Of a stretch of DNA of 35,937 nucleotides, positions 6,765-35,263 are shown in pieces. The stretch is from Octopus bimaculoides. Its lineage: Eukaryota. Location: the NCBI RefSeq assembly GCF_001194135.2, contig NC_068990.1:54527784-54563720 (forward strand), read 5' to 3'. The notes beneath the pieces are model-generated. The model made no database searches. It was given only the letters and a program-made list of their open reading frames with translations, and was not told the DNA's origin. Every line of letters begins with the position of its first letter. The first letter of the stretch is position 1. The position numbers were made by a program, and so were the translations under genes.

Positions 6765-6835
6765 CTTTGGCTGATCCTAGCACTACTTTTAGTTGTTCCT
6801 TTGGAGTCCTGGCTTCCAATGTCTGACCGTGTCAG
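6765..6835 (-). CDS. P4HA: P4HA paralog B exon 7 (LTRSDIGSQDSKGTTKSSARISQ-S/)
   Basis: ttgcag|CTG acceptor, AG|gtaagt donor, 71 nt, phase 0-2; same length and phase as the vertebrate LRRATI..YRISKS exon. Confidence 0.88.
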
Positions 6836-6904
6836 CTGCAATATATATATATGCAAATTAATTTAAAACAAAAATAATGAATGTTTTTTTTTGTAATTGA
6901 GTGT

Positions 6905-7410
6905 TGGTTATGAGAGTGGTTGTTGTTGCTGTGGTGGTAGTGGTGGTGGTGATTGTGGGGATTTTCTTGAAGGTAATATGTGAAGTAGAGGTGCTTATTT
7001 AAGATTATAATGATATTTGATGGTGGTGATGGTAGGATGAATAGTGATTAATATTTAAATGTCTGTAGTGGAGGATGTTGTGATAGTGGTGGTTGTGATG
7101 ATGGTAGTGGCAGATGTTATGATGGTGATGATTCTTGAAATGATAGTGATTTTTGTGATGAAGATGATTGTGGTAGTGGAGATGGTAGTGATAGTGGTTG
7201 TGGTTATGGTGGTAATAGTTGTGAGGGTAGTGGCGGTAGTAGTTGTTGCTATGATAGTGATTATTGTGATGGTAGTGTTTGTGGTGATGGAGATAGTTGT
7301 GGTAATGACAGTGGTTTTGTGATGGTAGTAGTTGTTGTGATAGTAGTCATTGTTGTTTTGGTGGTTGTGATGGTGTTGACTGTTGTTGTTGTACTGATGG
7401 TGGTAGTTTT
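6905..7410. repeat. Degenerate (GTG/GTA/GAT)n trinucleotide tract
   Basis: Direct inspection; source of the Val/Met-rich spurious ORF. Confidence 0.9.
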
Positions 7411-7440
7411 CTTATGTTTAAATTTTTAAAAAATGGTAAA

Positions 7441-7650
7441 GTTTCTATTCAAAGGAAACCGTATGGCACAAATCAATCACTACAGGGTAATATACAGAGA
7501 AGACAGTGTTTCCTATCTTTGAACACCATTTTGTGTCTAAGAACCCAACATTTAACACTCAACAACTGATTCAACTTTACTCAAACTCCAGGACATAGTT
7601 CATTTTTATAAACATAAACAACATTCTGGAACTATTCATTATTATGTTGG
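7441..7650. repeat. Arm 2 of a 210-bp inverted repeat (partner 3666-3875)
   Basis: Direct comparison as above. Confidence 0.92.
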
Positions 7651-7684
7651 CTGAAAGTGGTTGGCTCAGTTCCTGTGTAACAAA

Positions 7685-8010
7685 ACAACATCATTATTAT
7701 CATTGTTTAACATCTGTTTTCCATGCTGGTATGGATTTGACTGTTTCACAGGAGCTGGCCAGCTGGAGAATTGCCTGGGCTCCATTTGTCTGTTTTGGCA
7801 TGGTTTCCCTTGATGCCCTTCCTAATGCCAACCACTTTACAGAGTGTGTTGGGTGCTCTTTACATAACTTCAGCATGGATGCTTTTTAATGTGGTGCCAG
7901 CATGAGTGCATTTTATGTAGTGCCAACTCAAGTGCTTTTCATGTGGTGCTGGCACAAGTGCTTTGCACATAGTGCCAGCATGAATGAATTTTATGTGGCA
8001 CCAGTATGAG
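7685..8010 (-). mobile_element. RTE-tail repeat
   Basis: tttaacatctgttttccatgctgg..gatgcccttcctaatgccaaccact..gtgccagcatga subrepeats. Confidence 0.7.
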
Positions 8011-8894
8011 ACTCGTTTAAATGGTTACCTTGTCTCTATTTGATTTTTGTTAAGCATTGTTTAATAATATATGCTTCTTTGCAATACATGAATAATTTTG
8101 ATTGATTTAAGTGATTGTGCTCATTACATGAACTGTGCTTGGACTTCATTATGAAGGACTTTGTTATCAGATCAAAGCTATGGAAACTGGAGATATGTAC
8201 ATTTAAGCCTCAATAATCTAAACATTAATTATCTATATTTCAGATTACCCAAACAAGATTTCAAAGTTTGTGAATAATCTAATTCACCATAACCCAAACT
8301 CAAGAATAATACTGGTACTATCATTTCCTATTTTGTTTTCAATAATTAAAGTTAATTTGAATTACTGATGGACATGTAAAAATGTAGCATCAAAGAGGTA
8401 TTACAGACACTATTGTAACAGTTGTGCCTTTTGTTTACAATTATCAAAAGTACCTTGTGTCTGTTAGTTTTCTTGGTCATCTTATTTGAGTTCAGCTGGT
8501 CACTTACAACAGTGTTAAAAAAGATATAAACATGCAAAGCAGTGACAATATACAAACTTAGGATTAATTCAAATATTTTGAGAGATATTTGAATTCATTA
8601 CAGGTTTCTTACTGTAGTTAGTCATGAAGAAAAAAAAAATTCTCACTTAAGACAAAAAAAAAAAATGTCAGTTCACATCGTTCTCTATTGAAGTGATGGA
8701 TGTGTTTTTATCATAGGTGAGAAATTTTTCCCTGCAACAACAGGAAGTGAAAAGCCTTTTCAGATTCAAATATTTTTCTAATATACTTGAACTGATCATA
8801 AAACATTGGAACCAGGTTAACTTGTTTTTGATAGCAGAGTACTTTATGGAATAGTGGATAGAGATAAAAAATATGTTTGAATTATTCTCTATCT

Positions 8895-9305
8895 TTTATC
8901 TTTTATCTTTTACTTGTTTCAGCCTTTAGACTGTGGCCATGCTGGTTCACTGCCTTGAAGAATTTTTACTCAAATGAATCAACCCCAGTACTTTTTTTTT
9001 TAAACCTGGTACTTATTCTATCAACATCTTTTGCTGATTGCTAAGTTACAGGGACATAAACACACTGATACCAATTATCAGGAGGTGGTGGGGGACAAAC
9101 ACAGACACAAAGACACACACCCATAGATATACATATATTATATGTCGGGCTTCTTTCAGTTTCTGTCTACCAAATTTACTCACAAGACTTTGGTTGGCCT
9201 AAGACTATAGGAGAAGACACTTGCCTAAGGTGTCACATAGTAGGACTGAACCCAGAACCATGTGGCTGGGAAGCAAACTTCTTACCACAGTCACATATGT
9301 GCCTA
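8895..9305 (-). mobile_element. tRNA-derived SINE family 2 (CORE-like ccttgggcaagtgtcttc segment, internal CA/TA microsatellite)
   Basis: Minus-strand head gtggtaagaagtttgcttccc..ggttcagtcc..accttaggcaagtgtcttc. Confidence 0.8.
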
Positions 9306-9685
9306 CATAACTTGGGCATGCTGATTTCAGCCAATTTTAACAAATTGATTATTGGTATGTTAGTATACAAAAGCTTAATCAGTGCAGTAATTAAGTTCAA
9401 TATGGCTTCTTTGTCTGTGTTCACACCAATTATCTGAAGAATTACTTATCCAAACAAAATACTTCTCTTTTGTTTTATCTAGATACTTAAAAAGATCTAA
9501 ATGTATAGGATTTATAAGAGTCTTGACGTTCTGAAAAAGGTAAGTGTTGCTTATATTTTAAGACAAAAGATAGATGGAGTATTGTAGATATGAACTCTCA
9601 AACTTTTCCTAGTTTTTATTTTTCATAAAAATCCTGTAAAAATGGTTTAACTAATAAATAAATCAAAGTACACAATAGTATTTAC

Positions 9686-9847
9686 CTTGCGAACTGTTGT
9701 ATTCTTTATATAAGACATTTCTGAATCTGTGATGACATCATGATAGAGAACCACCAGAGGGTCATAGTGTAATATTTCTTGTTTGAAATTCAAATATGGT
9801 ACAAGTCTCTCTTGGAATGAACAGACAACACTGTTGGAGATTTGTGG
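9686..9847 (-). CDS. P4HA: P4HA paralog B exon 6 (PQISNSVVCSFQERLVPYLNFKQEILHYDPLVVLYHDVITDSEMSYIKNTTVRK)
   Basis: AAG|gtaaat donor; KQEILHYDPLVVLYHDVITDSE matches KQEDEWDKPRIIRFHDIISDAE; acceptor is an atypical tgaaaaaag|CCA, so the 5' boundary is less certain. Confidence 0.88.
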
Positions 9848-12256: not shown

Positions 12257-12420
12257 CTGTAACTGAGCCCGACACAATTTCTCAAAGTCATAGTAACCTA
12301 TCCATTTTGGTGGTGGGCGAATCAATGGATGCAAAACTTGTTTGTTACTAGATTTCTGAAGATAATTCCGTAATTCTGTCTGCAACTGATTGTCATGGAT
12401 ACCACTCCCATTCTTCTTGA
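12257..12420 (-). CDS. P4HA: P4HA paralog B exon 5 (/V-KKNGSGIHDNQ...YYDFEKLCRAQLQ)
   Basis: tttttcag|TC acceptor, CAG|gtaata donor, 164 nt, phase 1-0; FEKLCR matches the conserved YEMLCR. Confidence 0.88.
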
Positions 12421-12586
12421 CTGAAAAAATATCAACTCCTTAATTCTTTAGAAGGTTCTGATGATGCCAAAATCAGCACCATAACTTTGACAAAGTTGTT
12501 ATTTCAATATATTGCTGTTGTTGTTGTTTATTTGTCATTTCTCTAATTGTATGGTTAGTAATGTTACAACTGTGATGTTTGATATA

Positions 12587-12794
12587 CAAGGGGATGCTGA
12601 AAAGTTCCTGGCTTTAAGGGTATGGTGAAAGGCATGGTTGGAGGCCTAACCTTCTGAGTTCTTTTACTGGGCTTAGTAAAACTGAAGGACTGCTGCAATA
12701 AGTGAGTGAATCTGAGAGGCGAATATTTTGAATGATTAATTTATCTTCATGTATTATCTTTTATCCAAAGCCAAGGACTTTTCAGTACCCCCTC

Positions 12795-12795
<1 letters not shown>
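12587..12795 (+). mobile_element. Mariner-derived MITE (about 209 bp), TA target-site duplication
   Basis: TIRs caaggggatgctgaaaagttcctggcttt / aaagccaaggacttttcagtaccccctcg flanked by TA; keeps transposase tail (NLRGEYFE*). Confidence 0.85.
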
Positions 12796-12834
<39 letters not shown>

Positions 12835-12835
<1 letters not shown>

Positions 12836-12972
12836 AAGCATGGTTGAGTATTGCCTCTCAACCACATGGTTTCAGCTTCTCACTACATGTCACAAGTGTG
12901 TTCTGCTATAAGCTCAGGCTGACCAAAGTCTTGTGATTGAATTTGGCAGGCAGAAGTTTCAGTTGTGTTTCT
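12835..12972 (+). mobile_element. SINE family 2 head, cut by gap
   Basis: caaccacatggttt..caagtgtgttctgctata..gctgaccaaagtcttgtgattgaatttgg. Confidence 0.6.
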
Positions 12973-13649
12973 NNNNNNNNNNNNNNNNNNNNNNNNNNNN
13001 NNNNNNNNNNNNNNNNNNNNNNNNNNNNNNNNNNNNNNNNNNNNNNNNNNNNNNNNNNNNNNNNNNNNNNNNNNNNNNNNNNNNNNNNNNNNNNNNNNNN
13101 NNNNNNNNNNNNNNNNNNNNNNNNNNNNNNNNNNNNNNNNNNNNNNNNNNNNNNNNNNNNNNNNNNNNNNNNNNNNNNNNNNNNNNNNNNNNNNNNNNNN
13201 NNNNNNNNNNNNNNNNNNNNNNNNNNNNNNNNNNNNNNNNNNNNNNNNNNNNNNNNNNNNNNNNNNNNNNNNNNNNNNNNNNNNNNNNNNNNNNNNNNNN
13301 NNNNNNNNNNNNNNNNNNNNNNNNNNNNNNNNNNNNNNNNNNNNNNNNNNNNNNNNNNNNNNNNNNNNNNNNNNNNNNNNNNNNNNNNNNNNNNNNNNNN
13401 NNNNNNNNNNNNNNNNNNNNNTATTAAGACCTAAAAAGTTCTCAGACACAAGATGTGATCTATTTCTAGCGCATTAATTGTCCACGTTAGTGGTCGACGT
13501 TATTTTTTAAAATGTACCTTAATCCCCTGAGATTGCAGATAATATTTCTGAATCTCTTTGATTCTTTAAATGTGCTGGCCCCCTGATAATTAATCGATAT
13601 TAATTAATATATTAATATATGACTAATTACCAGATCTTATAATTATATA

Positions 13650-13982
13650 GATAGATAGATAGATAGATAGATTGATAGATATGGCCAGTCTATGGGGTTA
13701 CTCTGGGTTTCACGTCCATAAAGCAGTTAGCTTTACAGCATTTCTTCAAACCCTAGGCCTATGGCCTCTTTAGCAAGTGCCCTCTCTAGCAAGTACCCTC
13801 TCTAGCAAGTGCCCTCTCTAGAAAATGGACGAGGAAAAAACTTCATTACTCTATGTCAACAAGTCTTTTCCTCCTCCATAGGCCTAGGGTCTGAAAAAAA
13901 AAGATGCTGTAAACCTAAGTGGTTTATGGATGTGAATCTAAGAGTAACTGCATAGACCGGTTATATCTATCTTTATCTATAT
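13650..13982. mobile_element. Foldback/long-TIR MITE with internal 3 x 16-bp tandem repeat
   Basis: About 80-bp arms (13683-13765 vs 13878-13960) plus flanking (GATA)n/(TATC)n; tagcaagt(g/a)ccctctc x3 at 13771-13818. Confidence 0.75.
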
Positions 13983-14190
13983 ACTCTACTGCTCTATACC
14001 TTAGAGTGTGCTTCTTTTTTGGTTTTATAATTTACCAACGATGTGTGTGTGTGTGTGTGTGTGTGTTATGCTAAGAAATGGTGCACAATACCAGAATTTT
14101 CAATGTTTTAACCAAGGAAGGTCTTATGTAATGGATGGATTTCCTATTATATATTCCACAGACCTGAAATATACATATTAAATGATTTGT

Positions 14191-14221
<31 letters not shown>

Positions 14222-14384
14222 CATAGTTCAAATTTACAGAAAACAAAAGACAAAGACAGGTGAGAGAATAACAAGTGGGTGCATTAGTTTAATGCTTGGG
14301 AAGAATGGAAAAGTCTTTGACATGTTGAGCCTATGCTCTTCAACAGAAAAAATTGAGGGGAAAGAAAATGGAGAGAGAATGTAT

Positions 14385-14990
14385 ATATCATCATTATCAT
14401 TGTCATTTAATGTCCATTGTCCATGTTTGCATGGGTTGGACGATTTGACCAGTGCTGACAAACTGGAAGGCTGCACCAGATTTTAGTCTGATTTGGCATG
14501 ATTTCTATGGCTGGATGCCCTTCATAAACACCAAGAAAGTAACGGGTGCTTTCACATGCCACCAGTATGAATGCCATTTGCATAAAACCAGTATCTGCCA
14601 CAGCTGCAATTTTACTTGGCTTAATGAGTCTTCTTCTCAAGCATGACATAATGCCAAAGGTCTCGGTCATTGCCTCCATGAGGCCCAACACTCAAAAAGA
14701 ACTTTGCATGTGTCACCGGCATCAGCCATTTTGTCTCCATGAGGCCCAATGCTCAACCAGTGCTCTTTACATGCCACTGGCATAGATGCCAGTTACCTGA
14801 CACCAACATCAGCCATGACTACAATTTCACTTGACTTGATGGGTCTTCTCAAGCACAGCACATCGCCAAAGGTCTTGGTCATTGATCATTTCCTCTGTGA
14901 GGCTCAAAGTTTGAAGATCATACTTCACCACCTTGTCCCATATCTTCCTGGATCTACCTCTACCATAGGCTCCCTCCACAGTTAAAGATC
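14385..14990 (-). mobile_element. RTE 3'-end fragment in opposite orientation, abutting the + strand RTE
   Basis: Reverse complement resembles 15945-16730; ends in catcattatcat tail and the ccatg..gcatgggttggacg terminus. Confidence 0.8.
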
Positions 14991-14991
14991 A

Positions 14992-16736
14992 GCTGTCCAC
15001 GTCCATATGCAAGGGTTGGTAACAAGTATCGCGAAAAATTCAGGGTACAAGTAGGTTCATCAAGGATCAATCCTCAGCCCCCTCTTGTTCATCATAGTCC
15101 TCTAGACTATAACAGAGGAATTCAAGACAGGATGCCCCTGGGAGCTCCTCTATGCTGATGACCTTGCCCTTATAGCTGAATCACTACCAGGACTAGAAAA
15201 GAAGTTTCAGGTATGGAAGCAAGGTCTAGAATCGAAGGGCCTTAGAGTTAACCTAGCAAAAGCAAAAGTTTTAGTGAGTAGGAAGGCAGACAAATCCCAA
15301 ATCCCTTCTGGTAGATGGCTCTGCTCGATTTGTAGAAAAAGCGTTGGTAGAAACTTCATAAGATGTACCCGGTGTAAGCTATGGACACATAAGAAGTGCA
15401 GCAATATCAGAGGAAGGTTAACAGGAAAAATAGTTTTTGTGTATGGAAGGTGCACAGGTACAATAAACACCAAAAATGTACAAAAAATAGATTCCATCAC
15501 ATGCCAGTGGGGATAACTAGAAGTAGTCGATATCTTCTGTTACCTACGTGACCAAGTCAGTAGCAGGGTTGATACTCTGAGAGCATAGCTGCAAGAATAA
15601 GAATAGCCTGGGCAAAGTTCAGAGAGCTCCGAACTTTGTTGGTAACAAAGGGCCTCTCACTCAGAGTGAAAGGCAGACTGTATGATGTCTGTGTATGAAT
15701 AGCCATGCTACATGGTAATGAAACATGGGCTGTGATTGCTGAGGACATGCATGGGCTTGTAAGAAATGAAGCTAGTATGCTCCGCTGGATGTGTAATGTC
15801 AGTGTGCATGCATGACAAAGTGTATGTGTCCTGAGAGAAAAGTTGGACATAAGAAGCATCAGATGTAGTGTGTAAGAGAGACGACTCATTATTATGGTCA
15901 CATGATGCGTATGGATGAGGACAGCTGTGTGAAGAAATGTCACACTCTAACGGTGGAGGGAACCTGTGGAAGAGCTAGACCTGGGAAGACATGGGATGAG
16001 GTGGCGAAGAACGATCTTTGAATGTTGGGCTTCGCAGAGGCAATGACATATGCTGTCAAGCCAAGTGAGATCGTAGTCATGGCTGGTGCCAGTGATGGTT
16101 AACTGGTCCATTAAAAGAACCCTTCAATTATTGGGTAATGTGCTGTGCTTGTGAAGACCTGTTGAATAGAGTGAAATCTTAGTTGTGGTCAATGCCAGTG
16201 CCATCTGACTGGCACCCATACTGGTGGCATGTAAAGTGTACCGTTCGGGTGTTGGGCCTCATGGAGATAGTGATGTGAAGCCGAGTGAGATCATAGTCAT
16301 GGCCAATGCTAGTGTCGCATAACTAGCCTGTTAAAAGCACCCTTCAATCGTTGGGCGATATGTTATGCATGTGAAGATCTGTTGGACCGAATGAAATTTT
16401 TGTTGTGGCCGATGCCAGTGCCATCTAACTGGCATGTAAAAAGCACTATTCAAGCATTGGGCAGTGAAAGGTGACCAAGACCCTTGGTATTATATCATGC
16501 TTGTGTGGGCCTGTCAAGCCAAGTGAGACTGTAGTTGTGGCTGATGTTGGCGTCAGGTCAATGGCATCCATGCTGGCGGTACATAAAAATCCCCCACTAC
16601 ACTTTCAGAGTGGTTGGTGTCAGGAAAGGCATCCAGCCATAAAACCTTGCCAAATCAGATGGGAACCTGGTGCAGGTCTCCGGCTTACCAGTTTTCAGTC
16701 AAGCTGTCCAAACCATATGATGATGATGATGATGAT
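14992..16736 (+). mobile_element. RTE-clade LINE, 5'-truncated 3' half (RT C-terminus, repetitive 3' UTR, (GAT)n tail), decayed
   Basis: LFIIVL..ITEEFKTGCPWELLYADDL, GLRVNLAKAKV, KFREL..LLVTKGLSLRVKGRLY, with stops; tail gatgatgat at 16717-16736. Confidence 0.9.
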
Positions 16737-17043
16737 AACCAAGAGAGAGAGAGAGAGAGTGGCCCAATTCTATCTCATTATTTTTATTACTATTCTNNNN
16801 NNNNNNNNNNNNNNNNNNNNNNNNNNNNNNNNNNNNNNNNNNNNNNNNNNNNNNNNNNNNNNNNNNNNNNNNNNNNNNNNNNNNNNNNNNNNNNNNNNNN
16901 NNNNNNNNNNNNNNNNNNNNNNNNNNNNNNNNNNNNNNNNNNNNNNNNNNNNNNNNNNNNNNNNNNNNNNNNNNNNNNNNNNNNNNNNNNNNNNNNNNNN
17001 NNNNNNNNNNNNNNNNNNNNNNNNNNNNNNNNNNNNNNNNNNN

Positions 17044-19190
17044 ATAAAATGATGGTGCAGTGTATGCAGGTTGAAGGCTATTCTATGGTTATGAGTTCTG
17101 CCAAATGCAAGCTTTCTTTTCAGGTACCTGATGCGGCTGTCTCTCATCCCAGGGTTACACAGGTCCACACCTTCCACACCCTCAGAGTTGGGACACTTAA
17201 TGTTGGCATATTGAAAGGTAGGTCCGGTGAGATTGTTGAGATGTTTGAACGGAAATGTGTAGATCTGTGCTGCATCCAAGAAGTAAGATGGAGAAGTTCT
17301 GCTAGGTTCCTCACAGGCAAAGAACATAGGTATAAGATTTTCTGGGTAAAGAACACTGACAGGTTTGGGGACGTGGGTATACTTCGTGTGGAGAAATGGG
17401 TTGATTAGGTAATTGAGGTAGACAGAGTCTGTGATAGAATACTTAAGCTTAGATTAGTGCTGCAACATGGATTAGCAACCGTTATCTCAGCTTATGCCCC
17501 TCAGCCAGGACTACATGATAAGGACCTTCTCTTTGTGGCTGGTGACTTCAATGGGCATGTTGGACAACATGCAGGGGGCTTCCATGGCATACATGGTGGC
17601 TATGGTTTTGGTTCTTGCAATGAGGAGAGAACCAGGCTGCTGGAGTTCTGTGATGCAAATGATTTTATGGTTTGCAATACCAACTTCAGGAAACCTGCCA
17701 GTCACCTAATCATCTACCAGTCTGGTGGACACACTAATCAAATTGACATCCTCGCCAAGAAACAGGAAAGATGGCTACTTATAAATGCCAAAACCTTCTC
17801 AGGTGAAGAATGCACCCACAACATAGATTAGTAGTTAACGACTTCAGGATCAGGGCTAAATGGATGCCCAGAAGACTACCAGCATGGAAAAGAAGGGTCT
17901 GGTAGCTTAAGGATCCTGTGAATGGACAGAGATTTTGAGATGTATTACTCAAAGCTTTTGACAAAATAGAGGAGGATATAGCATCATATGATGTGGAAGA
18001 CAACTGAAGGCTCCTATAGGACAACCTGTTGAGGGTTACTGATCAGATCTGTGGATGGTGCAAAGTCCCCTCTCGACCCAAGGTAACATGGTGGTGAAAC
18101 AATGTAGTTGACAGGGCCATTAGGGAAAAGAAAGGGCATGAGAAAACTGGAAGAACAGTGGTAGCAAGGAATTGTATCAGATTGCCAGAAGGGAAGCTAG
18201 GAGACAGGTTTACTTAGCCAGAGGGAAAGCAGATAAGAAAAAATTTGCCAATGTTCTGCTTCATGAGGACCAAAGACTTGAAGTGTTTCATGTTGCAAGA
18301 CAGTGTGTGAGAGAGAAATGTGATGTCATAGAAGAGAAATGTGTTCGCATAGATGATGGCTCACTTGCATTTAATGAGGCTGCAAAGAGAGAGATACTTG
18401 GAGATGCTACTATGAAAGGATGCTAAATGAAGAGAATGAATGGGAGAAAGAGAGTCTGCCGTATGTCGACCCAACAGAGGGACCAGCTATCCGAATTGAC
18501 AGTACCTTGGTAGATAAAGCAATTAAGGGTATGAAGACAGGGAAAGCCCCTGGCTCATCAGGAATCACCACAGAGATGCTCAAAATGTCTGGCGGTGTTG
18601 GCTATATTCTTGTCACCAGTATAGTCTATCAGGTAATACATAAAGGAGTCATACAAAAGTCATCACCTTTACAAAAGTAAAGGTGATGCATTAGATACGA
18701 ATAATTACAGAGGTATCAAATTGTTGGATCAGGTGATGAAAGTCACGGAGAGTGTCATAGCCCAACTAATTAGGGAGAGAGTTAGTTTAGACACGATACA
18801 GTTTGGGTTTGTGCCAGGGAAAAGCACCACTGATGCTATATTTCTGGTAAGACAGCTGCAGGAGAAATACCTAGCCAAAGTCAAACCTCTGTACCTGGCT
18901 TTCGTTGACATGGAGAAAGCCTTTGACAGGATCCCTTATCTAGTGGTCAATGCGGAAACTAGGGATAGATGAGTGGTTAGTGAGAGCTGTACAAGCCATG
19001 TATGGGGATACAATCAGTAAGGTAAGGGTTAGCAACAAGTATAGTGAAGAATTCTGGGTAGGGATAGGGGTCCACCAAGGATCAGTCCTCAGCCCCCCCC
19101 CCTCTTATTCATCATAGTCCTCCAAGCAATAACAGAGGAATTCAAGACAGGATGCCCCTGGGAGCTTCTCTATGCTGATAACCTTTCTCT
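17044..19190 (+). mobile_element. RTE-clade LINE, 5' part (APE endonuclease and RT N-terminal domains), decayed and 3'-truncated
   Basis: LRVGTLNVG..CCIQEVRW, VAGDFNGHVG, KAPGSSGI, QFGFVPGKSTTDAIF..RQLQEK..AFVDMEKAFDR, GVHQGSVLS, LYADN; several frameshifts and stops. Confidence 0.95.
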
Positions 19191-19297
19191 AATACAGGAC
19201 ATCACCAACAGTAAACATGAAATACGTGAACAAATGAACGAGAGAAACAAATGGAAAACAGGACAAGTAATATAAAGACCAACCCTTCATCAGTTGA

Positions 19298-19363
<66 letters not shown>

Positions 19364-19392
19364 TCACACACACACACATGTGTATATGTTTA

Positions 19393-20240
19393 TGATGGGG
19401 TAGCCAAAAGTAACTGGAAATGTTCTCTGTAGGACAAGCCTGTTGTAGTTCAGGCTTCTACCGCTAGAAGTCACATGATGCAACCCTCAGGCATCAGTGT
19501 GCTGACTAGTGGCATCGAGTGAAGTTGTGCTGCCACGTGGTGCATCTTTGTTTTGTAGTACTTTTCCCCTGTTTGTTGATTTTTGCAATGGTCTAAATGA
19601 AGGAACAGTATGCTTCTATGAAATTCTGTTTTCTGATGGGGAAAACAATGGGTGAAACAATTCTCAAGCTTCTAACAGCTTATAAGGACGCTGCCATGAG
19701 CAAAACACAAGCCTATGAGTGGTTTTCATGCTTTAGGAACGGTCACTTGTTGGCTAAAGATCAACCTCGTCCAGGGCGTCTGTTGACCCCCCCACCCCAA
19801 AACAAATGAAAACATCATGAAAATTCATGAACTGATCTAGGAGGACCATCACTGAACAATTGATGAACTTGTTGATATAACTGGTATGTCCAGGAGCACC
19901 TTCCAATGAATTTTAAGTAATGAATTGTGAATGGAAAGAGTTGCAGCAATATTTGTGTCTCACTTGCTCACAGAAGATCAAAAGCAATCACAACTGAATG
20001 CAATCTGTGAACTGAAAGAAGAGTTGGAAGTTGATCCAGCCATTTTTTCGAAGGTCATCACTGGTGAGGAAAGCTGGTGCTGCAGTATTTGCAGATGTAG
20101 AAGAGATGAAAAAAAACAACACTGACATTGAAAGGCATCACTTCACAAGAGTTCCAGAACTGCTCCAAAAAGTAGAAAACACATCCAGACTGATGCATTG
20201 CTTCAAATGGATGATATTCTGAAGACAATAATTATCTGAA
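19393..20240 (+). mobile_element. Decayed mariner transposon with internal deletion
   Basis: TA + tgatggggtagccaaaagtaactggaa 5' TIR-like end; KFCFLMGKT..ET..L..AY.DAAMSKTQAYEWF..F helix-turn-helix; FVSHLLT (WVPHEL-like); ITGEESW (first catalytic D altered); C-terminal CIASNG.YSE; no clear 3' TIR. Confidence 0.85.
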
Positions 20241-20541
20241 ACCTTCTTTTGAGAAAGGAGATGGTTTCTAACAAAGATACAAAGCTCCTCATCAGAATGT
20301 AAATAAAAAAACAAATTCACATTTTAAACTTGAGAAAAGTCTTGTATATTTTCACTGTTCTACTTATAGATAGTATTTTTAATGTATGAATTAGCTGGTT
20401 GATTTAATTTTATGAAAACCCTAGTTTATGATGTATGCGTGCGTGTGTGTGTGTTTGTATGTGTGTGTATGTGTGTAAAACAACTTTCTCCCTAAGATTT
20501 TTTTATTAGGTCTTCATCAATTCATTCAAAATTGTACTCAC

Positions 20542-20587
20542 CAATCAACTGTTGGACAGAATCAGCTGAAAGATCTGGTCTTCCAAG
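20542..20587 (-). CDS. P4HA: P4HA paralog B exon 4 (LGRPDLSADSVQQLI-G/)
   Basis: ttttgtag|CTT acceptor, G|gtgagt donor, 46 nt, phase 0-1; the only candidate I found that bridges exon 3 (phase 0) to exon 5 (phase 1); aligns to the TPR-like QGDLDKALLLTKKLL helix. Confidence 0.8.
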
Positions 20588-22176: not shown

Positions 22177-22505
22177 CTTATAAAGCATAGCTGCCATTGA
22201 CTTATGGGCTTTAGTGAGTAAATGTTGTGATGCTGTGTCTGTACCAAGTATACTAATGGTATAATTATACCATTTCACAGCTTCCCACTCCATTTCCATG
22301 TCCTGGGCCACATCAGCAATGCTAAGGTATTGTGTCGTCTCTAAAGCCATAGTTCTCTTTCCCAGCAGATTCCCTCTTGCCAGTTGATACAGTGGTACTT
22401 GGTATATTTCTACAATCCGTAGAAGTCCAAGTGATGCCCCCTCAAGGTCATCTGTGTCTGGCCACATTTCTGAGTCTTGTATGAATTTGGCAGTGTGTAA
22501 GAATT
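22177..22505 (-). CDS. P4HA: P4HA paralog B exon 3 (FLHTAK..MWPDTDDLEGASLGLLRIVEIYQV..LARGNL..AAMLYK)
   Basis: gttatag|AA acceptor, AAG|gtaatt donor, 329 nt, phase 1-0; WPDTDDLEGASLGLLRIVEIY aligns to FPNDEDQVGAAKALLRLQDTY. Confidence 0.93.
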
Positions 22506-24186: not shown

Positions 24187-24362
24187 TGTTTGCAAATGTT
24201 TCTGACTCTGGTGTAACATGTTCAGTCCTTAATATCATGTTTAATAGGTCCTTTATTCGGTGCCATTCATACAAGAATCTGTGAACAAGCTGATAACTAT
24301 TCACTGCATTTCCTACTTGTCTGCCTTCTTGGGACAACTTGTGTTCAGTTTTCACAACAAAT
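24187..24362 (-). CDS. P4HA: P4HA paralog B exon 2 (FVVKTEHK...GNAVNSYQLVHRFLYEWHRIKDLL...FAN)
   Basis: ctgcag|A acceptor, A|gtaagt donor, 176 nt, phase 2-1; GNAVNSYQLVHRFLYEW aligns to P4HA GHPVNAFKLMKRLNTEW. Confidence 0.9.
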
Positions 24363-25852: not shown

Positions 25853-26064
25853 CTGATAATATCGTTCATATTTTGACCACCAATATCTCGAGATTCAATA
25901 CCATTTTGACTTTGAATGAATTTCCCGAGAGAACTCAATAAAACCAATTCTAGATTGGATAAAACTTTCAGTTTCACAACAGATGAGAAGACCTCAGCAT
26001 TGATATTCAAAGTTATTTGTGAGGACCACACCAGTAAGAAAGCAGTGACTGTCTGCTTGAACAT
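25853..26064 (-). CDS. P4HA: P4HA paralog B exon 1: signal peptide and start of N-terminal dimerisation domain (MFKQTVTAFLLVWSSQITLNINA-EVFSSVVKLKVL...)
   Basis: cacaccATG start, hydrophobic leader ending INA/EVFSS (cf. P4HA EFFTS), AG|gtaag donor in phase 2 that matches the next exon. Confidence 0.85.
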
Positions 26065-30228: not shown

Positions 30229-30308
30229 TTAGATATCTTCAGCATTTATTTTTAATCCACATGGTCGTTGGAACATCTGTTCTACTTCATGAATCCATTT
30301 ATTGGCAA
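30229..30308 (-). CDS. P4HA: P4HA paralog A terminal coding exon (/[26 protein letters not shown])
   Basis: ttctag|TT completes GTT (Val) from the previous phase-1 exon; NKWIHE..F.RPC is the P4HA C-terminal motif; TAA at 30231-30229. Confidence 0.95.
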
Positions 30309-30344: not shown

Positions 30345-30367
30345 GTAATAACAACAACAACAACAAC

Positions 30368-30423
<56 letters not shown>

Positions 30424-30445: not shown

Positions 30446-30653
30446 GGTTTCAAATTTTGGCACAAGACCAGTAAGTTTAGGGGGTGGGGTCAAATCAAGT
30501 ACATCAACCACAGTACTCAACTGGTACTTATTTTATCGACCCCGAAAGGATGAAAGGCAAAGTCAACCTTGGCAACATTTGAACTCAGAATGTAAAAGAC
30601 AGATGAAATGCTACTAAGCATTTTGCCCAGCATGCTAATGATTCTACCAGCTT
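30446..30653 (-). mobile_element. SINE family 1 copy
   Basis: Reverse complement of the 31385-31599 pattern; tail merges into (AAT)n. Confidence 0.8.
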
Positions 30654-31384
30654 GAATAATAACAACAGTTTTTATATAGTTAAAAAGATATCTGGTGTGG
30701 CATCTGGTGAGATGTGTGGTACAAGAAAACAGAGGTCATCATCATCTTCATCATCATCGTTTAAAGTCCGCTGAACTATTTGAAAGAAACATCTAGACGA
30801 GGATATTTTATGGCTGATTTCAATTTAATGAAAAATATTTAATGAGATATTCAATGAAACTGCAACAATAATAACATTAAGACTAAATTAATCGTGTCTG
30901 TTTTATATTTCAATAAACTTCTGAAATAGTAACAACGACTCCAATGGCTTGAGATGCTGTTATTTTGAATCTTGCATTGTCAAGGAAGTTTGTTTTAAAT
31001 GCCTCTATTACACAAATAAAGGGAACAGTAAATAAGAAATAGAGTTACTGTATAATTAATAATGTATAGGAAGAAGCATTTGCACATCCCTTCCTCCAGA
31101 AAAATTAATTTTAAAATAAAAAGAAAATCATTTTCAGAATGCCAAAAAGTAAATAGTCTGAAAGAACCTTCAGTTAATTCAATATCATTGTTAACTGTTA
31201 ACCAATTATTGTCAGGATCATCAATTGTAACCAAAATGGAATAAATTATGTTTATGAACATAATTTATGGTTTCATTAATATAGAAGGTGTTAACGCAAT
31301 ACAAGTAAATAAACATTCAGATAAAACAATAGATATGACAAGTGCAGAAATTCTTTATTGGGAATTCAATATTTAAGCTAATTA

Positions 31385-31599
31385 AGGCAGCGAGCTGGTA
31401 GAAATAGCACGTCGGGTGAAATGCTTAGCAGTATTTCGTCTGTCTTTACGTTCTGAGTTCAAATTCCACTGAGGTCGACTTTGCTTTTCATCCTTTCAGG
31501 GTTGATAAATTAAGTACCAGTTGTGTACTGGGGTCAATGTAATTGACTGGACCCCTCTCCCAAAATTTTGGGCTTTGTGCCTAGAGTAGAAAAGAATAT
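31385..31599 (+). mobile_element. tRNA-derived SINE family 1, near full length
   Basis: A-box-like gagctggtagaa, B-box-like gagttcaaattcc, body tttcatcctttcagggttgataaattaagtacc. Confidence 0.85.
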
Positions 31600-32240
31600 T
31601 TAAGCTAATTTTTACACATTAATTCATATTCTTGATGCCATGATGTGTCTCCTTCTTCAATTGTTCCAGGTTGAGTATGTAGCTGTGAAGACATCTATAT
31701 GTGGAGAGTGAACATCACCAGAAACCAAATCCCTCTGGTGTTTTGGTGATCAGTTGAGCTGTATTTGTTGGTTATGTTCATGGAAGGTTCTAGTCATGAC
31801 ACCAAACTATCACATGAACAACAGCTAGGTTTGTGCACATGATCAAATTGTGATTTCTATGTGGTCAAATGTGGGATCAAATCCAATTGTAACAAATGTA
31901 TTCAAATACTATAAAACTGTGAAAAACTTAGAATCACAGAGGTGAGCAGCAGACATAAACAAACTAACTCATTTCCAGCAGCTGCCTTTACAAGTTTCAA
32001 AACTGCCACTAGGTTGGGTTTTCCTTATTCTTGGGACCATTATTGTATAGAGGTGTGCACAACACAGGGGGATTCAATGGTAGAGTGTCAGACTAAACAT
32101 CTTGTTACTTCATTTCAAATGTTTACATTTTGTGTTCAAATTCTTGCATATTTTACTTTGCTTTACCTTCTTCCAGTCCATAATGACAGATAATTTGTCA
32201 TTCTTGTAGTAATTTGCTGTAGTTGCAAGTGAATTCTTAC

Positions 32241-32337
32241 CCCACTTTGATCCTACTGCAACTGGACAACTAGCATGTAATGTCTTGGGATCTCGGCGCT
32301 GGTTTCTTTTCAAATTGTACCAAAAGACTGCTGAACC
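32241..32337 (-). CDS. P4HA: P4HA paralog A exon (GSAVFWYNLKRNQRRDPKTLHASCPVAVGSKW-G/)
   Basis: tttcag|GGT acceptor, TGG G|gtaag donor, 97 nt; contains G.AVFWYNL, distal iron-binding His (LHASCP) and 2OG-binding Lys (GSKW). Confidence 0.97.
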
Positions 32338-32459
32338 CTGAAACAGAAACACAATAATCACTTTAGGTGACTTAGAGAACAAAACAAAAATAGTTCTGAA
32401 TCCATGATGTTTAATAGTACGAAATAGAAACTAAAGTAATAACAATAAGAGGCTATGGT

Positions 32460-32473
32460 AATAGCAACTATAT

Positions 32474-32506
<33 letters not shown>

Positions 32507-32585
32507 CGACGACCACGACAACAACAACGACAGCAACAATGATGACGACAATGATGATGACAATAATGATGATGATGATGATGGG
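32460..32585. repeat. (GAT/GAC/AAC)n tract
   Basis: Direct inspection. Confidence 0.9.
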
Positions 32586-32904
32586 GCTGTATTGGTTCTG
32601 ACATCTATAAATATAATAAAAGAACAATGCTTTCTAAACCTCCAGAAAGCTTTCAGTGCTTGGTACTGTAGAAGGGTGGAGGGTATTAAACGAATAAATG
32701 ATGAGTATCTTCATGGATGGATCTACCTCTTATGGTTAGATACTGATTCTACAGTGAAAGGTGAACTGAGAAACAAGATTAACAATAATGTCCACATACA
32801 AAACACAATGTCCAAAGAAGAATTCAACTGAAGAACTGCTTCATCCAATACAATGTCAATTTAGAGTCTCATGGTCCAGCACTGCAGACACTGGGACACT
32901 TCAT

Positions 32905-33110
32905 TTCTTCTTTTAACTATTACTTGTTTCAGTCAATGGGTCACAGCCATGCTGGAGCATCACCTTAGTGGGTTCAGTCAAATAAATCAACCCCAGTACT
33001 TATTTTTAAGTCTGGTACTTATTCTATCAGTCTCTTCTGCCAAACCACTAAGTTATTGGTTAAACAAACCAGCACTGGTTGTCAAGCGGATGGGAGATAC
33101 AAACACACAT

Positions 33111-33164
<54 letters not shown>

Positions 33165-33310
33165 GGCTTCCACATAGTTTCCATCTAACAAATTCACTCA
33201 TAAGGGTATGGTCAGTTCAGGATTATAGTAGAAGACATTTGCCCAAGTTGACATGCATGGAACTGAACTCAAAACCATATGCTTCCAAGCTAGCTTCTTA
33301 ACCATGCAAC
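32905..33310 (-). mobile_element. SINE family 2 copy
   Basis: Colinear with 8895-9305. Confidence 0.8.
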
Positions 33311-33384
33311 AAATCTAAAAGAAATTTGTTAAATATATTTCTTCCATCTCTAAAACATTTTTGACAAAACAGAGTGAGACCCAC

Positions 33385-33453
33385 CTTTATTACAGGTATC
33401 TGCACATTAATCTTTGGAAAAATTGTGGCTCCTCCAAGTGTAACATTGGACAT
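33385..33453 (-). CDS. P4HA: P4HA paralog A exon (MSNVTLGGATIFPKINVQIPVIK)
   Basis: ttctag|ATG acceptor, AAG|gtgggt donor, 69 nt, phase 0-0; matches MSDVSAGGATVFP..PKK exon of P4HA. Confidence 0.95.
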
Positions 33454-33559
33454 CTAGAAGAGAGAAAGAAAAATGGTAAAAGAAGCAGGAGAAAAGAAAG
33501 AAAAAGAAAACTGTGAATATATCATTGAAGAATTGAGGGGTTATTTTTAGTAGTCATTT

Positions 33560-33750
33560 TTAGCAGTTGTTGGGGAAAAGATGTGGTGATATTTGTGATG
33601 CTGGGTGGGGATAGGGTGGGGGTGATGGTACCAGTGGTGATGACGGTGCTGGTGGTGGTGGTGGCAGGGGGCCTGGTGCTGGTAATGGTGATGGTGGTGG
33701 TGATGATCATGATGGTGCTGATGGTGATGGTGCTAATGGTGGCAGTGCCT
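33560..33750. repeat. Degenerate (GGT/GAT/GCT)n tract
   Basis: Direct inspection. Confidence 0.88.
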
Positions 33751-33925
33751 ATACACACCGGGTCATTTATTAAGTGTGTGTATAACCCTAGTGATTGTCA
33801 CACCTATTTTACTTCTTTAATTAAAGACTGGACAACCAGAACAAACCAATGTGATTGCTGTTAGTACACATCCACTAGATACAACAAACCCAATGTTACA
33901 AAAATGGTACATTCCTAAAAATATT

Positions 33926-34114
33926 GGTTTTAAATTTTGGTTCAAGGTCAGCAATTTAGGGGAGGGGTTCAAATGGTACTTATTTTATCATCCCCAAAAA
34001 GGATGAAAAGCAAATTTGACCCCAGCAGCATTTGAACCCAGAATGTAAAGACAGATGAAATGCAGGTAAGCATTTTTGTCTGGCATGCTAATGATTTTGC
34101 CAGCTTGCTGCCTT
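33926..34114 (-). mobile_element. SINE family 1 copy
   Basis: ggtacttattttatcatccc..ggatgaaaag..tttgaacccagaatg. Confidence 0.8.
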
Positions 34115-35182
34115 AAACGTTCTTTAAAATATTATGGTAACATTGAATTCCATAATTTGAAAGATCCTTCTCATCAATTTCCATTTTACATAGATTACTA
34201 GGAAATAGGTTTGGTATCATAGACTTTAAGATTTTCAGGAATACATTTTCACAATTGAGGTGATGTCTATCTGTGGCAGTTATTCTTGACATTTTTAGTA
34301 ATCTCATTGGAAGAAGTTTTAATTTTGTGCTTTTAGTTATGCAGGTATTTTGAAAATACCTCACGGAGTGATGACTGTGCCCTGCGTAGTTTCAGGTTGC
34401 CCTTTGGCAAGGCATAGCACCCATTCAGCTACCCTTAATGGTGAAGTCATAGGACTACAGCATGGCAGATTGTGAAGAGGTAGCAGAAGAGTTCAACTGA
34501 GCCAGTGGTGCTTCTTACATTGATACCGATCAGAAGAATCCTAGAAGATCGATGGTCAGGATCACCAAACTCTATCAAGAGAGTAACTGTAATGCATCCA
34601 TAGGGGTGGTATCTATGGTTGTGTAATCAGCTAATAAAAGAGTAACGCTTTGACTCAAGTTCTCAATTCAAATTCATAATAATGGAATTGGATGGTGAGA
34701 GAGAGCCATGGAAATCTGTGAAAGCAACGAAATAATTTTAAATAACAAGAGGGGTAAAAAAGGTTGTTGACTGTGCATTTTGTAAGGAAAATGTATAATT
34801 TATTTTTTCACCTTCTTTGATATCTTCAAGATGTCACAAACCAATGTGAGATGCCTCAAGCGGGACACTCGACCTGCTAGAAATATCAGCCAAAATTTTC
34901 CACAAATCGCACCCACCGGAAGGAAGGTTCATCCAATGACATGCTTTTACAAATCTCTAAAATATAGGGTGACCACAGCTGGAGTACTTTTGATCATAGG
35001 TCTCTTCGATAAGAGCTGAAATGGGTCTAAGAACCCCACCACCATCACCACAACAAATAACAACAACAGCAGCAACAACAACAATGGCAATAACAACAAC
35101 CTCAAAGTATTTTCAAAGCATTTTATTAAGTATTTAATTACTTTATCCAACCCCAAAAATGTTTATTAAAGCTGTGACTCAC

Positions 35183-35263
35183 ATAAAGCATCCATGTTGC
35201 TATACGATCTCCAGAACCAATGAGGAATTGACTGGCAGATTTTTCCAACTGTTCCTTGGATTC
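35183..35263 (-). CDS. P4HA: P4HA paralog A, internal coding exon (ESKEQLEKSASQFLIGSGDRIATWMLY); upstream exons lie beyond the right edge
   Basis: cccag|GAA acceptor, TAT|gtgagt donor, 81 nt, phase 0-0; GDRIATWMLY matches the P4HA GNRIATWLFY motif. Confidence 0.93.

What the first reader, a model, noticed from the sequence alone, without database searches (positions are those of the whole stretch)
6765..35263. Tandem head-to-tail array of divergent prolyl 4-hydroxylase alpha paralogs
Seen: the stop of paralog A (30229) lies about 4.2 kb upstream of the ATG of paralog B (26064) on the same strand; 11 exons join in phase with GT-AG sites and no stops, and most are invisible in the ORF track. 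Established: collagen P4HA subunits are ER 2-oxoglutarate dioxygenases, few in vertebrates, with lineage-specific expansions in some invertebrates such as Drosophila. Inference: a local mollusc/cephalopod expansion with specialised paralogs, possibly for non-collagen secreted substrates (gland, venom, sucker, egg-case or skin proteins).
Basis: partly seen in the sequence, partly recalled or inferred. Interest (0 to 1): 0.7.

Follow-up and report, generated by a model that had tools for sequence, protein, structure and literature searches.

The report
Tandem octopus prolyl 4-hydroxylase genes
The window holds the tail of one octopus collagen-type prolyl 4-hydroxylase alpha gene and the head of a very different second one just downstream; this pair is real, old and already annotated in related octopuses, and its only unusual point is that the first gene has lost an iron-binding histidine.

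Summary
On the minus strand, gene A ends at TAA 30231-30229. Gene B starts at ATG 26064, 4,164 bp downstream.

Both genes are partial. A lacks its 5' two-thirds. B lacks exons 8-13, its catalytic core.

The two flagged gaps lie in B intron 4, inside two ~3.2 kb insertions absent from O. vulgaris. They break no exon.

Misassembly of a single gene is excluded. O. sinensis and O. vulgaris carry the same A-then-B order, and each gene there has its own N- and C-terminus. The window is collinear with O. vulgaris at 88-93% nucleotide identity.

A and B orthologues share only 31.5% identity. Each has its own orthologues in other cephalopods, and neighbour-joining does not unite them. This is an old pair, not a recent local expansion.

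B's orthologues keep the full His-X-Asp...His/Lys site. A has Arg in place of the first iron ligand in three Octopus species, yet shows no sign of decay.

Substrate ideas remain untested. Interest is modest.

The parts
35709..35759 (-). Gene A exon (VLNYGLGAMYEPRVDYF). It carries the His-X-Asp position, here Arg-Val-Asp, with Arg codon CGT at 35723-35721.
   Evidence: tblastn with P0026; AG/GT borders; aligned to the EPHFDF of human P4HA2 in 7ZSC
35183..35263 (-). Gene A exon (ESKEQLEKSASQFLIGSGDRIATWMLY)
33385..33453 (-). Gene A exon (MSNVTLGGATIFPKINVQIPVIK)
32241..32337 (-). Gene A exon (GSAVFWYNLKRNQRRDPKTLHASCPVAVGSKW). It carries the second Fe-ligand His and the 2-oxoglutarate-binding Lys.
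30229..30308 (-). Gene A last exon ([26 protein letters not shown]), with stop TAA at 30231-30229
   Evidence: 96% identical to the C-terminus of O. sinensis P0026
26065..30228 (-). A-to-B intergenic region, 4,164 bp and gap-free. It contains microsatellites, SINE-like copies, and at 29885-29799 a sequence that the O. vulgaris gene model uses as an alternative 5' exon of B.
25853..26064 (-). Gene B exon 1: ATG at 26064, a hydrophobic N-terminus resembling a signal peptide, and the start of the P4Ha_N domain
24187..24362 (-). Gene B exon 2 (P4Ha_N domain)
22177..22505 (-). Gene B exon 3 (end of the N domain and the TPR-like peptide-substrate-binding domain)
20542..20587 (-). Gene B exon 4
12421..20541 (-). 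Gene B intron 4 (8,121 bp). It holds both flagged assembly gaps, two ~3.2 kb insertions absent from O. vulgaris (12777-15994 and 16497-19738), a reverse-transcriptase remnant (18721-19117, + strand) and a mariner HTH remnant (19597-19809, + strand).
12257..12420 (-). Gene B exon 5 (linker region)
9686..9847 (-). Gene B exon 6 (start of the catalytic domain: ILHYDPLVVLYHDVITDSEMSYIK)
6765..6835 (-). Gene B exon 7, the last B exon present in the window. It ends ...ARISQ(S) at donor AG|GTAAGT. Exons 8-13 are not in the window.

Best explanation
The window comes from an Octopus genome. It is close to, but not the same as, O. sinensis and O. vulgaris. It cuts across the junction of two neighbouring genes of the collagen-type prolyl 4-hydroxylase alpha-subunit family, both on the minus strand.

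Gene A is the orthologue of O. sinensis 'P4HA1' (542 aa). It contributes its last five exons, which are the C-terminal half of the catalytic double-stranded beta-helix domain.

Gene B is the orthologue of the O. sinensis 'alpha-2-like/alpha-3-like' gene and the O. vulgaris 'alpha-1-like' gene (about 547 aa). It contributes its first seven exons: a signal-peptide-like start, the N-terminal dimerisation domain, the TPR peptide-substrate-binding domain, the linker and the start of the catalytic domain.

The two are ancient paralogues (about 32% identity) kept side by side in the genus. They are not a recent local duplication and not an assembly artefact.

The mechanism is inferred from the family. 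Both would be ER-luminal alpha subunits that dimerise through the N domain, bind proline-rich peptides through the TPR domain and associate with protein disulfide isomerase.

B's orthologues keep every residue needed for Fe(II)/2-oxoglutarate catalysis, so B is predicted to be an active prolyl 4-hydroxylase of unknown substrate preference.

A has Arg in place of the first iron ligand (His-X-Asp has become Arg-Val-Asp) in all three Octopus species examined. It keeps the remaining active-site residues and evolves no faster than its His-bearing Argonauta orthologue. A is therefore most likely a conserved non-catalytic, or mechanistically altered, alpha subunit.
For: Gene models:
- All 12 exons have AG/GT borders and consistent phases, with no stops.
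- A is 96% identical, and B 92.5% identical without gaps, to annotated octopus proteins.
- The same splice borders are present in O. vulgaris DNA.

Domains:
- Pfam finds P4Ha_N in B (E 2.4e-13) and 2OG-FeII_Oxy_3 in A (E 2.8e-10).
- An AlphaFold model of the O. sinensis B orthologue (P0024) has pLDDT about 85-95 over residues 30-280. Its eight best PDB matches are all the human C-P4H-I N+PSB double domain (E 1e-6 to 1e-4, TMt 0.58-0.65).

Conserved tandem:
- O. sinensis has A followed 8.2 kb later, on the same strand, by a P4Ha_N gene.
- O. vulgaris has A, then B, then a convergent third P4HA-like gene.
- Window 35832-6667 is collinear with O. vulgaris at 88-93% nucleotide identity.
- The stretch 17044-35937, which holds both the A stop and the B ATG, has no gap.

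Distinct genes:
- B's orthologues have their own C-terminus, only 47% identical to A's.

Age of the split:
- Bootstrap support is 99.5% for the A-type clade, 100% for the B-type clade and 1% for A+B.
- The A-type cluster includes a cuttlefish protein.
- A B-type 547-aa ORF is found uninterrupted on six ~2 kb transcript-like contigs.

Selection:
- Exons are 96.5-97% identical to O. vulgaris at the nucleotide level, against 88-93% for introns.
- dN/dS is 0.44 for B (binomial p=0.011 for a value below 1) and 0.34-0.48 for A.

Active site:
- A's Arg aligns with the His of the His-X-Asp motif of human P4HA2 (7ZSC) and of Chlamydomonas P4H.
- That motif is described as fully conserved, and as the Fe(II) site, in PMC9676403.
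- The Arg is present in the window, O. sinensis and O. vulgaris, but not in Argonauta or the cuttlefish cluster.
- Only four of the 217 fetched P4HAs in which the motif search found this site have a residue other than His there.
- Tajima relative-rate test on the catalytic domain: 16 Octopus-unique against 16 Argonauta-unique changes.
Against: - Neither gene is complete in the window. B's catalytic core (exons 8-13) is absent, so B's integrity in this species is unproven.
- Collinearity with O. vulgaris ends near 3875, at a small inverted piece and a gap.
- dN/dS values of 0.34-0.48 rest on few substitutions and indicate only moderate constraint.
- Another octopod contig carries a 2-bp frameshifting insertion in B exon 3. 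B may therefore be dispensable in some lineages.
- The phylogeny is neighbour-joining on very divergent sequences. Deep branching order, including whether B groups with chiton or limpet genes (27% support), is unresolved.
- Loss of activity in A is inferred from one residue. No enzyme assay, expression data or PDI-binding data exist here.
- Pfam's TPR_P4H model does not hit A or B.
Confidence: 0.8

Rival explanations
1. The two segments are parts of one P4HA gene whose 3' exons were misplaced upstream of its 5' exons by the assembly. The parts are complementary: A covers the last ~125 residues and B the first ~386.
For: The in-window parts of A and B do not overlap in protein coordinates and nearly add up to one protein. 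The scaffold has five gaps and a broken end.
Against: The A stop, the intergenic region and the B ATG lie on one gap-free stretch, 17044-35937. O. sinensis and O. vulgaris chromosome-scale assemblies show the same order. There A has its own N-terminus and B has its own C-terminus, the latter only 47% identical to A's. Complementarity is expected in any case, because the repeat period (gene plus spacer, about 36-45 kb) is close to the window length.
Confidence: 0.02
2. A recent, octopus-specific tandem duplication followed by very fast divergence: the 'local expansion' of the first reader.
For: The genes are adjacent and in the same orientation. B's best non-self hits are A-type proteins by a small margin (272-275 bits against 252 or less). 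Long-branch effects could hide a sister relationship in neighbour-joining.
Against: A and B share 31.5% identity, no closer than either is to bivalve, limpet or chiton P4HAs. A-type has a cuttlefish-cluster orthologue at 47%, and B-type has a separate orthologue at 53%. A+B monophyly gets 1% bootstrap.
Confidence: 0.07
3. Gene B is truncated or decaying in this species, that is, a pseudogene or a gene fragment lacking its catalytic exons.
For: Exons 8-13 are not found anywhere in the window, although exon 8 lies only ~1.05 kb after exon 7 in O. vulgaris. Collinearity breaks at ~3875. Another octopod has a frameshift in exon 3. dN/dS is 0.44.
Against: The seven exons present are intact, with conserved splice sites, and are more conserved than the introns. 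The place where exon 8 is expected coincides with an assembly gap (3327-3615) and an apparent misjoin, which is the simpler explanation. Full-length B-type mRNAs exist in a relative.
Confidence: 0.12
4. Gene A is still a working prolyl 4-hydroxylase despite the Arg, through a substitute ligand or a two-residue iron site.
For: All other active-site residues are kept: the 2-oxoglutarate-contacting Tyr, Thr and Lys, the Asp and the second His. The catalytic domain shows no rate acceleration. A nemertean paralogue also has Arg at this position, though followed by His (Pro-Arg-His-Asp).
Against: The His-X-Asp...His triad is described as fully conserved and as the Fe(II) site (PMC9676403). From my own knowledge, not checked here: Myllyharju and Kivirikko 1997 reported that mutating this His abolishes activity of the human enzyme. 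Arg cannot coordinate Fe(II) in the usual way. The window sequence has no nearby His (MYEPRVDY).
Confidence: 0.2

Closest known systems
Vertebrate collagen prolyl 4-hydroxylase alpha subunits (P4HA1, P4HA2, P4HA3; structures 4BT8/4BTB for N+PSB and 7ZSC for CAT+PDI)
   Same: The domain order is the same: signal peptide, N dimerisation domain, TPR peptide-substrate-binding domain, linker, then a 2OG-Fe(II) catalytic domain. The length is about 540 aa. A's catalytic part aligns end to end with 7ZSC (E 5.8e-51 for the full orthologue). The model of B's N-terminal half matches 4BT8/4BTB best of all PDB entries. Exon number is also similar: 13 exons in the O. vulgaris B gene.
   Different: Overall identity is only about 30-34%. 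Pfam's TPR_P4H model does not recognise the PSB region of A or B. A has Arg in place of the first Fe ligand. B has Arg where vertebrates have the His of the WxHE motif, but so do scallop and nemertean relatives. Vertebrate P4HA genes are dispersed; these two are adjacent.
Drosophila PH4alpha-related genes, including the 99F8-9 cluster (Abrams and Andrew 2002, cited in PMC12340787; at least 26 candidates in the fly)
   Same: This is an invertebrate multiplication of P4HA-like genes with clustered genomic arrangement. Some members lack parts needed for catalysis (PMC12340787).
   Different: The fly cluster is a large lineage-specific expansion. Here only two genes, or three with the degenerate convergent gene in O. 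vulgaris, lie together, and the A/B split is old. Tissue specificity is known in the fly and unknown here.
C. elegans PHY-1/PHY-2
   Same: Two divergent alpha subunits in one animal that can assemble into a mixed tetramer with PDI. This is a precedent for the idea that A and B could work together.
   Different: Both nematode subunits have an intact iron site. Their genes are not reported as neighbours. No interaction data exist for the octopus proteins.

Membership tests
Collagen-type prolyl 4-hydroxylase alpha subunit (P4HA) family | N-terminal P4Ha_N dimerisation domain (PF08336) | tested here: met
   Window B protein residues 28-178 score E 2.4e-13 (50.5 bits, cut-off 25.3). The A orthologue P0026 scores E 2.5e-21. 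A's N-terminus is not in the window.
Collagen-type prolyl 4-hydroxylase alpha subunit (P4HA) family | TPR-like peptide-substrate-binding domain after the N domain | tested here: met
   By fold: the model of the B orthologue has pLDDT 85-95 over residues 30-280. Its top eight PDB matches are the human N+PSB double domain, with 258-265 aligned columns and TMt up to 0.65. By sequence: Pfam TPR_P4H (PF23558) does not hit. Conservation of the groove tyrosines was not examined.
Collagen-type prolyl 4-hydroxylase alpha subunit (P4HA) family | C-terminal 2OG-Fe(II) oxygenase domain (PF13640) | tested here: met
   Window A fragment scores E 2.8e-10 (41.5 bits, cut-off 27). The B orthologue P0023 scores E 8.8e-10. 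In the window B has only the first ~80 residues of this domain.
Collagen-type prolyl 4-hydroxylase alpha subunit (P4HA) family | His-X-Asp...His iron-binding triad | tested here: not met
   This applies to gene A. It has Arg-Val-Asp (codon CGT at 35723-35721) in the window, O. sinensis and O. vulgaris, while the second His is present. A therefore belongs to the family by descent and architecture but fails the catalytic criterion. Gene B's orthologues have His-His-Asp...His; B's own exons for this are not in the window.
Collagen-type prolyl 4-hydroxylase alpha subunit (P4HA) family | Residues binding 2-oxoglutarate (Tyr, Thr and Lys; Tyr421, Thr467 and Lys511 in human P4HA2) | tested here: met
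   A has NYG, RIATW and GSKW. The B orthologue has NYG, RIATV and GDKW. Residue roles are taken from PMC9676403.
Collagen-type prolyl 4-hydroxylase alpha subunit (P4HA) family | Alpha2-beta2 assembly with protein disulfide isomerase in the ER, and hydroxylation of X-Pro-Gly | not testable with these tools
   This needs co-expression and an enzyme assay. B's N-terminus (MFKQTVTAFLLVWSSQITLNINA) looks like a signal peptide, but no predictor was run.
Lineage-specific tandem gene expansion (recent local duplicates) | The neighbouring copies are each other's closest relatives, to the exclusion of genes in other lineages | tested here: not met
   A+B monophyly gets 1% bootstrap. The A-type and B-type clades each get 99.5-100%, with members from other cephalopod lineages. 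The method was neighbour-joining only.

The most novel reading that the evidence does not exclude
Octopus A is a conserved 'dead' alpha subunit. It lost its iron ligand after the split from Argonauta but kept its fold, its 2-oxoglutarate pocket and its evolutionary rate. It could work together with its catalytically intact neighbour B, or with another alpha subunit, in a mixed alpha/alpha'-PDI complex. Alternatively it could act as a proline-rich-peptide-binding chaperone without hydroxylating. The conserved adjacency of the two genes would then reflect co-regulation of a two-part enzyme.
Probability: 0.12. Interest if true: 0.55.

Novelty: new member of a known kind. Interest (0 to 1): 0.3.

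Why it matters
Hydroxyproline chemistry underlies collagen stability and several invertebrate secreted materials. Knowing which of an animal's many P4HA-like genes are real enzymes is a precondition for studying that chemistry.

This locus shows that octopuses keep at least two, and in O. vulgaris three, very divergent P4HA-like genes side by side. The one that automated annotation names 'P4HA1' lacks an essential iron ligand. Anyone using that annotation as the octopus collagen hydroxylase should be warned.

Beyond that, the locus is an ordinary case of an old paralogue pair in a known family. The genes are already predicted in public annotations of two related species.

Tried and rejected
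- Single-exon protein searches returned only short fragments and no cephalopod proteins. A chimeric B+A query was needed to pull out the octopus orthologues.
The O. sinensis orthologue P0024 was used instead.
- P0024 could not be looked up by exact sequence, because only the longest isoform is on record. The O. vulgaris orthologue P0023 gave the B locus.
- I searched the window for B exons 8-13 by tblastn (E up to 1) and by blastn with short words. I found only microsatellite noise and weak paralogous matches to A exons.
- I searched the flanks of the O. sinensis and Argonauta loci, and Argonauta's 34-kb last intron, for further P4HA copies. None was found. A B-type gene elsewhere in Argonauta was not looked for.
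- The third O. vulgaris gene was only weakly detectable. Its catalytic motifs are degenerate.
- Rfam and tRNA scans of the window found nothing.
- Literature searches for an octopus or mollusc P4HA tandem found nothing specific.
- I considered and rejected the idea that the Arg is an assembly error. It is present in three independent assemblies.
- I also noted that A-to-I RNA editing cannot turn a genomic CGT back into a His codon. This is reasoning, not a test.
- The species behind the B-type mRNA contigs (runs SRR23936173, SRR19578105 and others) could not be identified with the tools.

Full report
**What is in the window.**
- The window is 35,937 bp, AT-rich, and has five N-gaps (3327-3615, 4471-4480, 5798-6295, 12973-13421, 16797-17043).
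- Reading the three minus-strand frames showed recognisable pieces of a prolyl 4-hydroxylase alpha subunit.
- Single-exon searches were uninformative.
- A query joining the clear pieces retrieved annotated octopus proteins:
  - O. sinensis 'prolyl 4-hydroxylase subunit alpha-1' (P0026, 542 aa);
  - O. sinensis 'alpha-2-like X2' (P0024) and 'alpha-3-like X3' (P0025);
  - O. vulgaris 'alpha-1-like' (P0023, 470 aa);
  - Argonauta hians 'alpha-1' (P0027).
- tblastn of these proteins against the window and inspection of every border gave exact models.

**Gene models.**
- Gene A has five exons: 35759-35709, 35263-35183, 33453-33385, 32337-32241 and 30308-30229, with TAA at 30231-30229. They encode 125 aa, 96% identical to the C-terminus of P0026.
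- Gene B has seven exons: 26064-25853, 24362-24187, 22505-22177, 20587-20542, 12420-12257, 9847-9686 and 6835-6765. They encode 386 aa, 92.5% identical without any gap to a composite of the O. sinensis and O. vulgaris B proteins.
- All borders are AG/GT, the phases fit, and there are no stops.
- The same borders exist in O. vulgaris DNA.
- The A stop and the B ATG are 4,164 bp apart.

**The gaps.**
- Both flagged gaps lie in B's 8,121-bp intron 4.
- DNA comparison with O. vulgaris shows that window 19738 and 16497 both abut the same O. vulgaris position (L002 ~26999). Window 15994 and 12777 both abut L002 ~27533.
- Each gap therefore sits inside a ~3.2 kb insertion that O. vulgaris lacks.
- One insertion carries a reverse-transcriptase remnant. 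A mariner remnant lies just beside it, in sequence that O. vulgaris shares.
- Exons 4 and 5 are contiguous in the O. sinensis protein and join in phase.
- The gaps therefore do not touch the coding sequence.

**Is it one misassembled gene?**
- The in-window parts of A and B do not overlap in protein coordinates, so this had to be tested from outside the window.
- The stretch 17044-35937, which holds the A stop, the spacer and the B start, has no gap.
- In O. sinensis the A gene (36.9 kb) is followed 8.2 kb later, on the same strand, by a P4Ha_N gene.
- In O. vulgaris the order is A, then B (42.8 kb, 13 exons), a small gene, and then a third P4HA-like gene on the opposite strand.
- Window 35832-6667 is collinear with O. 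vulgaris at 88-93% nucleotide identity.
- B's orthologues have their own C-terminal catalytic exons, only 47% identical to A's. A's orthologue has its own N-terminus.
- The one-gene explanation is excluded.
- The near-complementarity is simply what a 36-kb window gives on a repeat unit of about that length.

**What is missing.**
- A's first two-thirds lie beyond 35937.
- B's exons 8-13, which in the orthologues carry the His-X-Asp...His site, are not in the window.
- Collinearity with O. vulgaris continues, at lower identity, to window ~3875 (L002 35138). Then come a 177-bp inverted copy of 7441-7617, a microsatellite, the gap 3327-3615 and unrelated sequence.
- O. vulgaris exon 8 lies 470 bp beyond the last collinear point, so in the window it would fall at or after that gap.
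- I cannot tell whether the exon is hidden by the gap, lost through a misjoin, or truly absent.

**What the genes are.**
- Pfam finds P4Ha_N in B and 2OG-FeII_Oxy_3 in A.
- The A orthologue aligns over 245 residues with the human P4HA2 catalytic domain in 7ZSC (E 5.8e-51).
- An AlphaFold model of the B orthologue is confident over residues 30-280. Its eight best PDB matches are all the human C-P4H-I N-terminal plus peptide-substrate-binding double domain.
- Both are thus collagen-type P4H alpha-subunit family members in architecture.
- They are only about 30-34% identical to any non-cephalopod P4HA, and 31.5% identical to each other.

**Age of the pair.**
- The exhaustive search with the B orthologue found a 547-aa B-type protein at 53% identity (P0283).
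- P0283 is encoded as an uninterrupted ORF on six ~2-kb contigs from sequencing-run assemblies. These contigs are most simply read as mRNAs. The species is unknown; that it is a cephalopod is an inference.
- An A-type 542-aa cluster (47% identity) includes an Acanthosepion (Sepia) pharaonis protein.
- In neighbour-joining with 200 bootstraps the A-type clade has 99.5% support, the B-type clade 100%, and A+B together 1%.
- Both lie in a loose group of lophotrochozoan P4HAs whose internal order is unresolved.
- A scallop member of that group has no P4HA neighbour.
- The pair is old. It is not a recent local expansion, nor is it shown to be widely syntenic.

**Selection.**
- Against O. vulgaris, exons are 96.5% (B) and 97.1% (A) identical. 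Introns are 88-93% identical.
- Nei-Gojobori dN/dS is 0.44 for B (16 synonymous and 26 nonsynonymous changes; binomial p=0.011 for a value below 1). It is 0.34-0.48 for the short A fragment.
- This means moderate purifying selection on both.
- A contig from another octopod has a 2-bp insertion in B exon 3, so B may not be indispensable everywhere.

**The active sites.**
- In the alignment with 7ZSC and with Chlamydomonas P4H, the His of the His-X-Asp motif corresponds to Arg in Octopus A (EPRVDY).
- The Arg codon (CGT, 35723-35721) is present in the window, O. sinensis and O. vulgaris.
- Argonauta and the cuttlefish cluster have His.
- PMC9676403 calls the His-X-Asp...His motif fully conserved and the Fe(II) site, and names Tyr421, Thr467 and Lys511 as 2-oxoglutarate contacts. 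All of these except the first His are kept in A.
- Only four of the 217 fetched P4HAs in which the motif search found this site have a residue other than His there.
- A relative-rate test with the cuttlefish-cluster protein as outgroup shows no acceleration in Octopus A's catalytic domain: 16 unique changes against 16.
- A therefore looks like a conserved protein that can no longer bind iron in the canonical way.
- B's orthologues keep the whole site.

**Comparison with what is known.**
- The closest known kind is the vertebrate collagen P4H alpha subunit: same architecture, low identity, dispersed genes.
- The closest genomic analogy is the Drosophila set of at least 26 P4H-alpha-like genes, including the 99F8-9 cluster. 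Some of those lack catalytic parts (PMC12340787).
- Full-text searches found no paper on an octopus or mollusc P4HA tandem.
- The genes themselves are already predicted in public annotations.

**Verdict.**
Tandem divergent paralogues: yes. Local expansion: no. Specialised substrates: untested, and unlikely for A as an enzyme.
- Novelty is low. The only mildly surprising element is the Arg-for-His change in the gene annotated as octopus 'P4HA1'.

Noticed in passing
window 35721-35723 (minus strand), within the A exon 35759-35709: The first iron-binding His of the His-X-Asp motif is Arg (CGT) in gene A. The same is true in O. sinensis and O. vulgaris, but Argonauta and a cuttlefish-cluster orthologue have His. 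The gene that annotation calls octopus 'P4HA1' is thus probably not a working hydroxylase.
   Followed up: yes
window 12777-15994 and 16497-19738: These are two ~3.2 kb insertions in B intron 4 that O. vulgaris lacks, and each contains one of the flagged gaps. The second holds a reverse-transcriptase remnant (RVT_1, 18721-19117, + strand). A mariner HTH_48 remnant lies next to it, outside the insertion, at 19597-19809 (+). A PHD-finger-like ORF lies at 15274-15516 (+).
   Followed up: partly
window 3699-3875 versus 7441-7617: A 177-bp stretch is an inverted copy of B intron 6 sequence; it is 93% identical to the same O. vulgaris segment, but in the opposite orientation. It sits exactly where collinearity with O. 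vulgaris ends, next to the gap 3327-3615. This may be a scaffold misjoin, and would explain why B exon 8 is not seen.
   Followed up: partly
window 29799-29885 (minus strand): About 340 bp after the A stop lies a sequence that the O. vulgaris B gene model uses as an alternative first exon (72% aa identity), spliced into the middle of B exon 1. It hints at read-through from A or at a second promoter. The Met of the O. vulgaris model is Ile in the window.
   Followed up: no
window 31381-31605 (+); 30440-30652, 22662-22842, 11972-12133, 33970-34116 and 28304-28382 (all -): A ~200-bp interspersed repeat family (SINE-like, 75-80% identity between copies) has six copies in the introns and spacer. 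Many more copies occur in the O. sinensis and O. vulgaris loci. It gave no Rfam or tRNA match.
   Followed up: partly
window 4582-5166 (+): A 194-aa ORF with an Asn-rich start has no Pfam match. It lies in a block between two gaps that interrupts the collinear O. vulgaris intron 7 sequence, so it is probably part of an inserted element.
   Followed up: no
L002 (O. vulgaris OX597823.1) 56677-62817, minus strand: A third P4HA-like gene (580-aa product, P4Ha_N and TPR_P4H) lies convergent to B. Its catalytic exons are degenerate: GTEIVFP replaces GGATVFP, the region around the second His is shortened, and GSLW replaces G-x-KW, so the 2-oxoglutarate Lys is lost.
   Followed up: partly
L002 30374-31016 (O. 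vulgaris): A ~320-bp tandem duplication includes most of B exon 6, giving two copies at 30559-30699 and 30882-31049. The window has a single copy (9714-10035). The O. vulgaris protein model skips most of this exon.
   Followed up: no
L011 (Logan SRR11869391 contig) ~1400, aligned to window 22230-22240: Another octopod, about 85% identical at the protein level, has a 2-bp insertion in B exon 3 that shifts the frame. This points to pseudogenisation of B in that lineage or to an assembly error.
   Followed up: partly
P0031 (Lineus longissimus 'alpha-2-like'), motif YQPRHDY: A nemertean P4HA-like protein also has Arg at the first-His position, here followed directly by His. Replacement at this site has thus happened more than once in lophotrochozoans. 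Arg in place of the His of the WxHE motif is common in this group (octopus B, scallop, nemertean).
   Followed up: no
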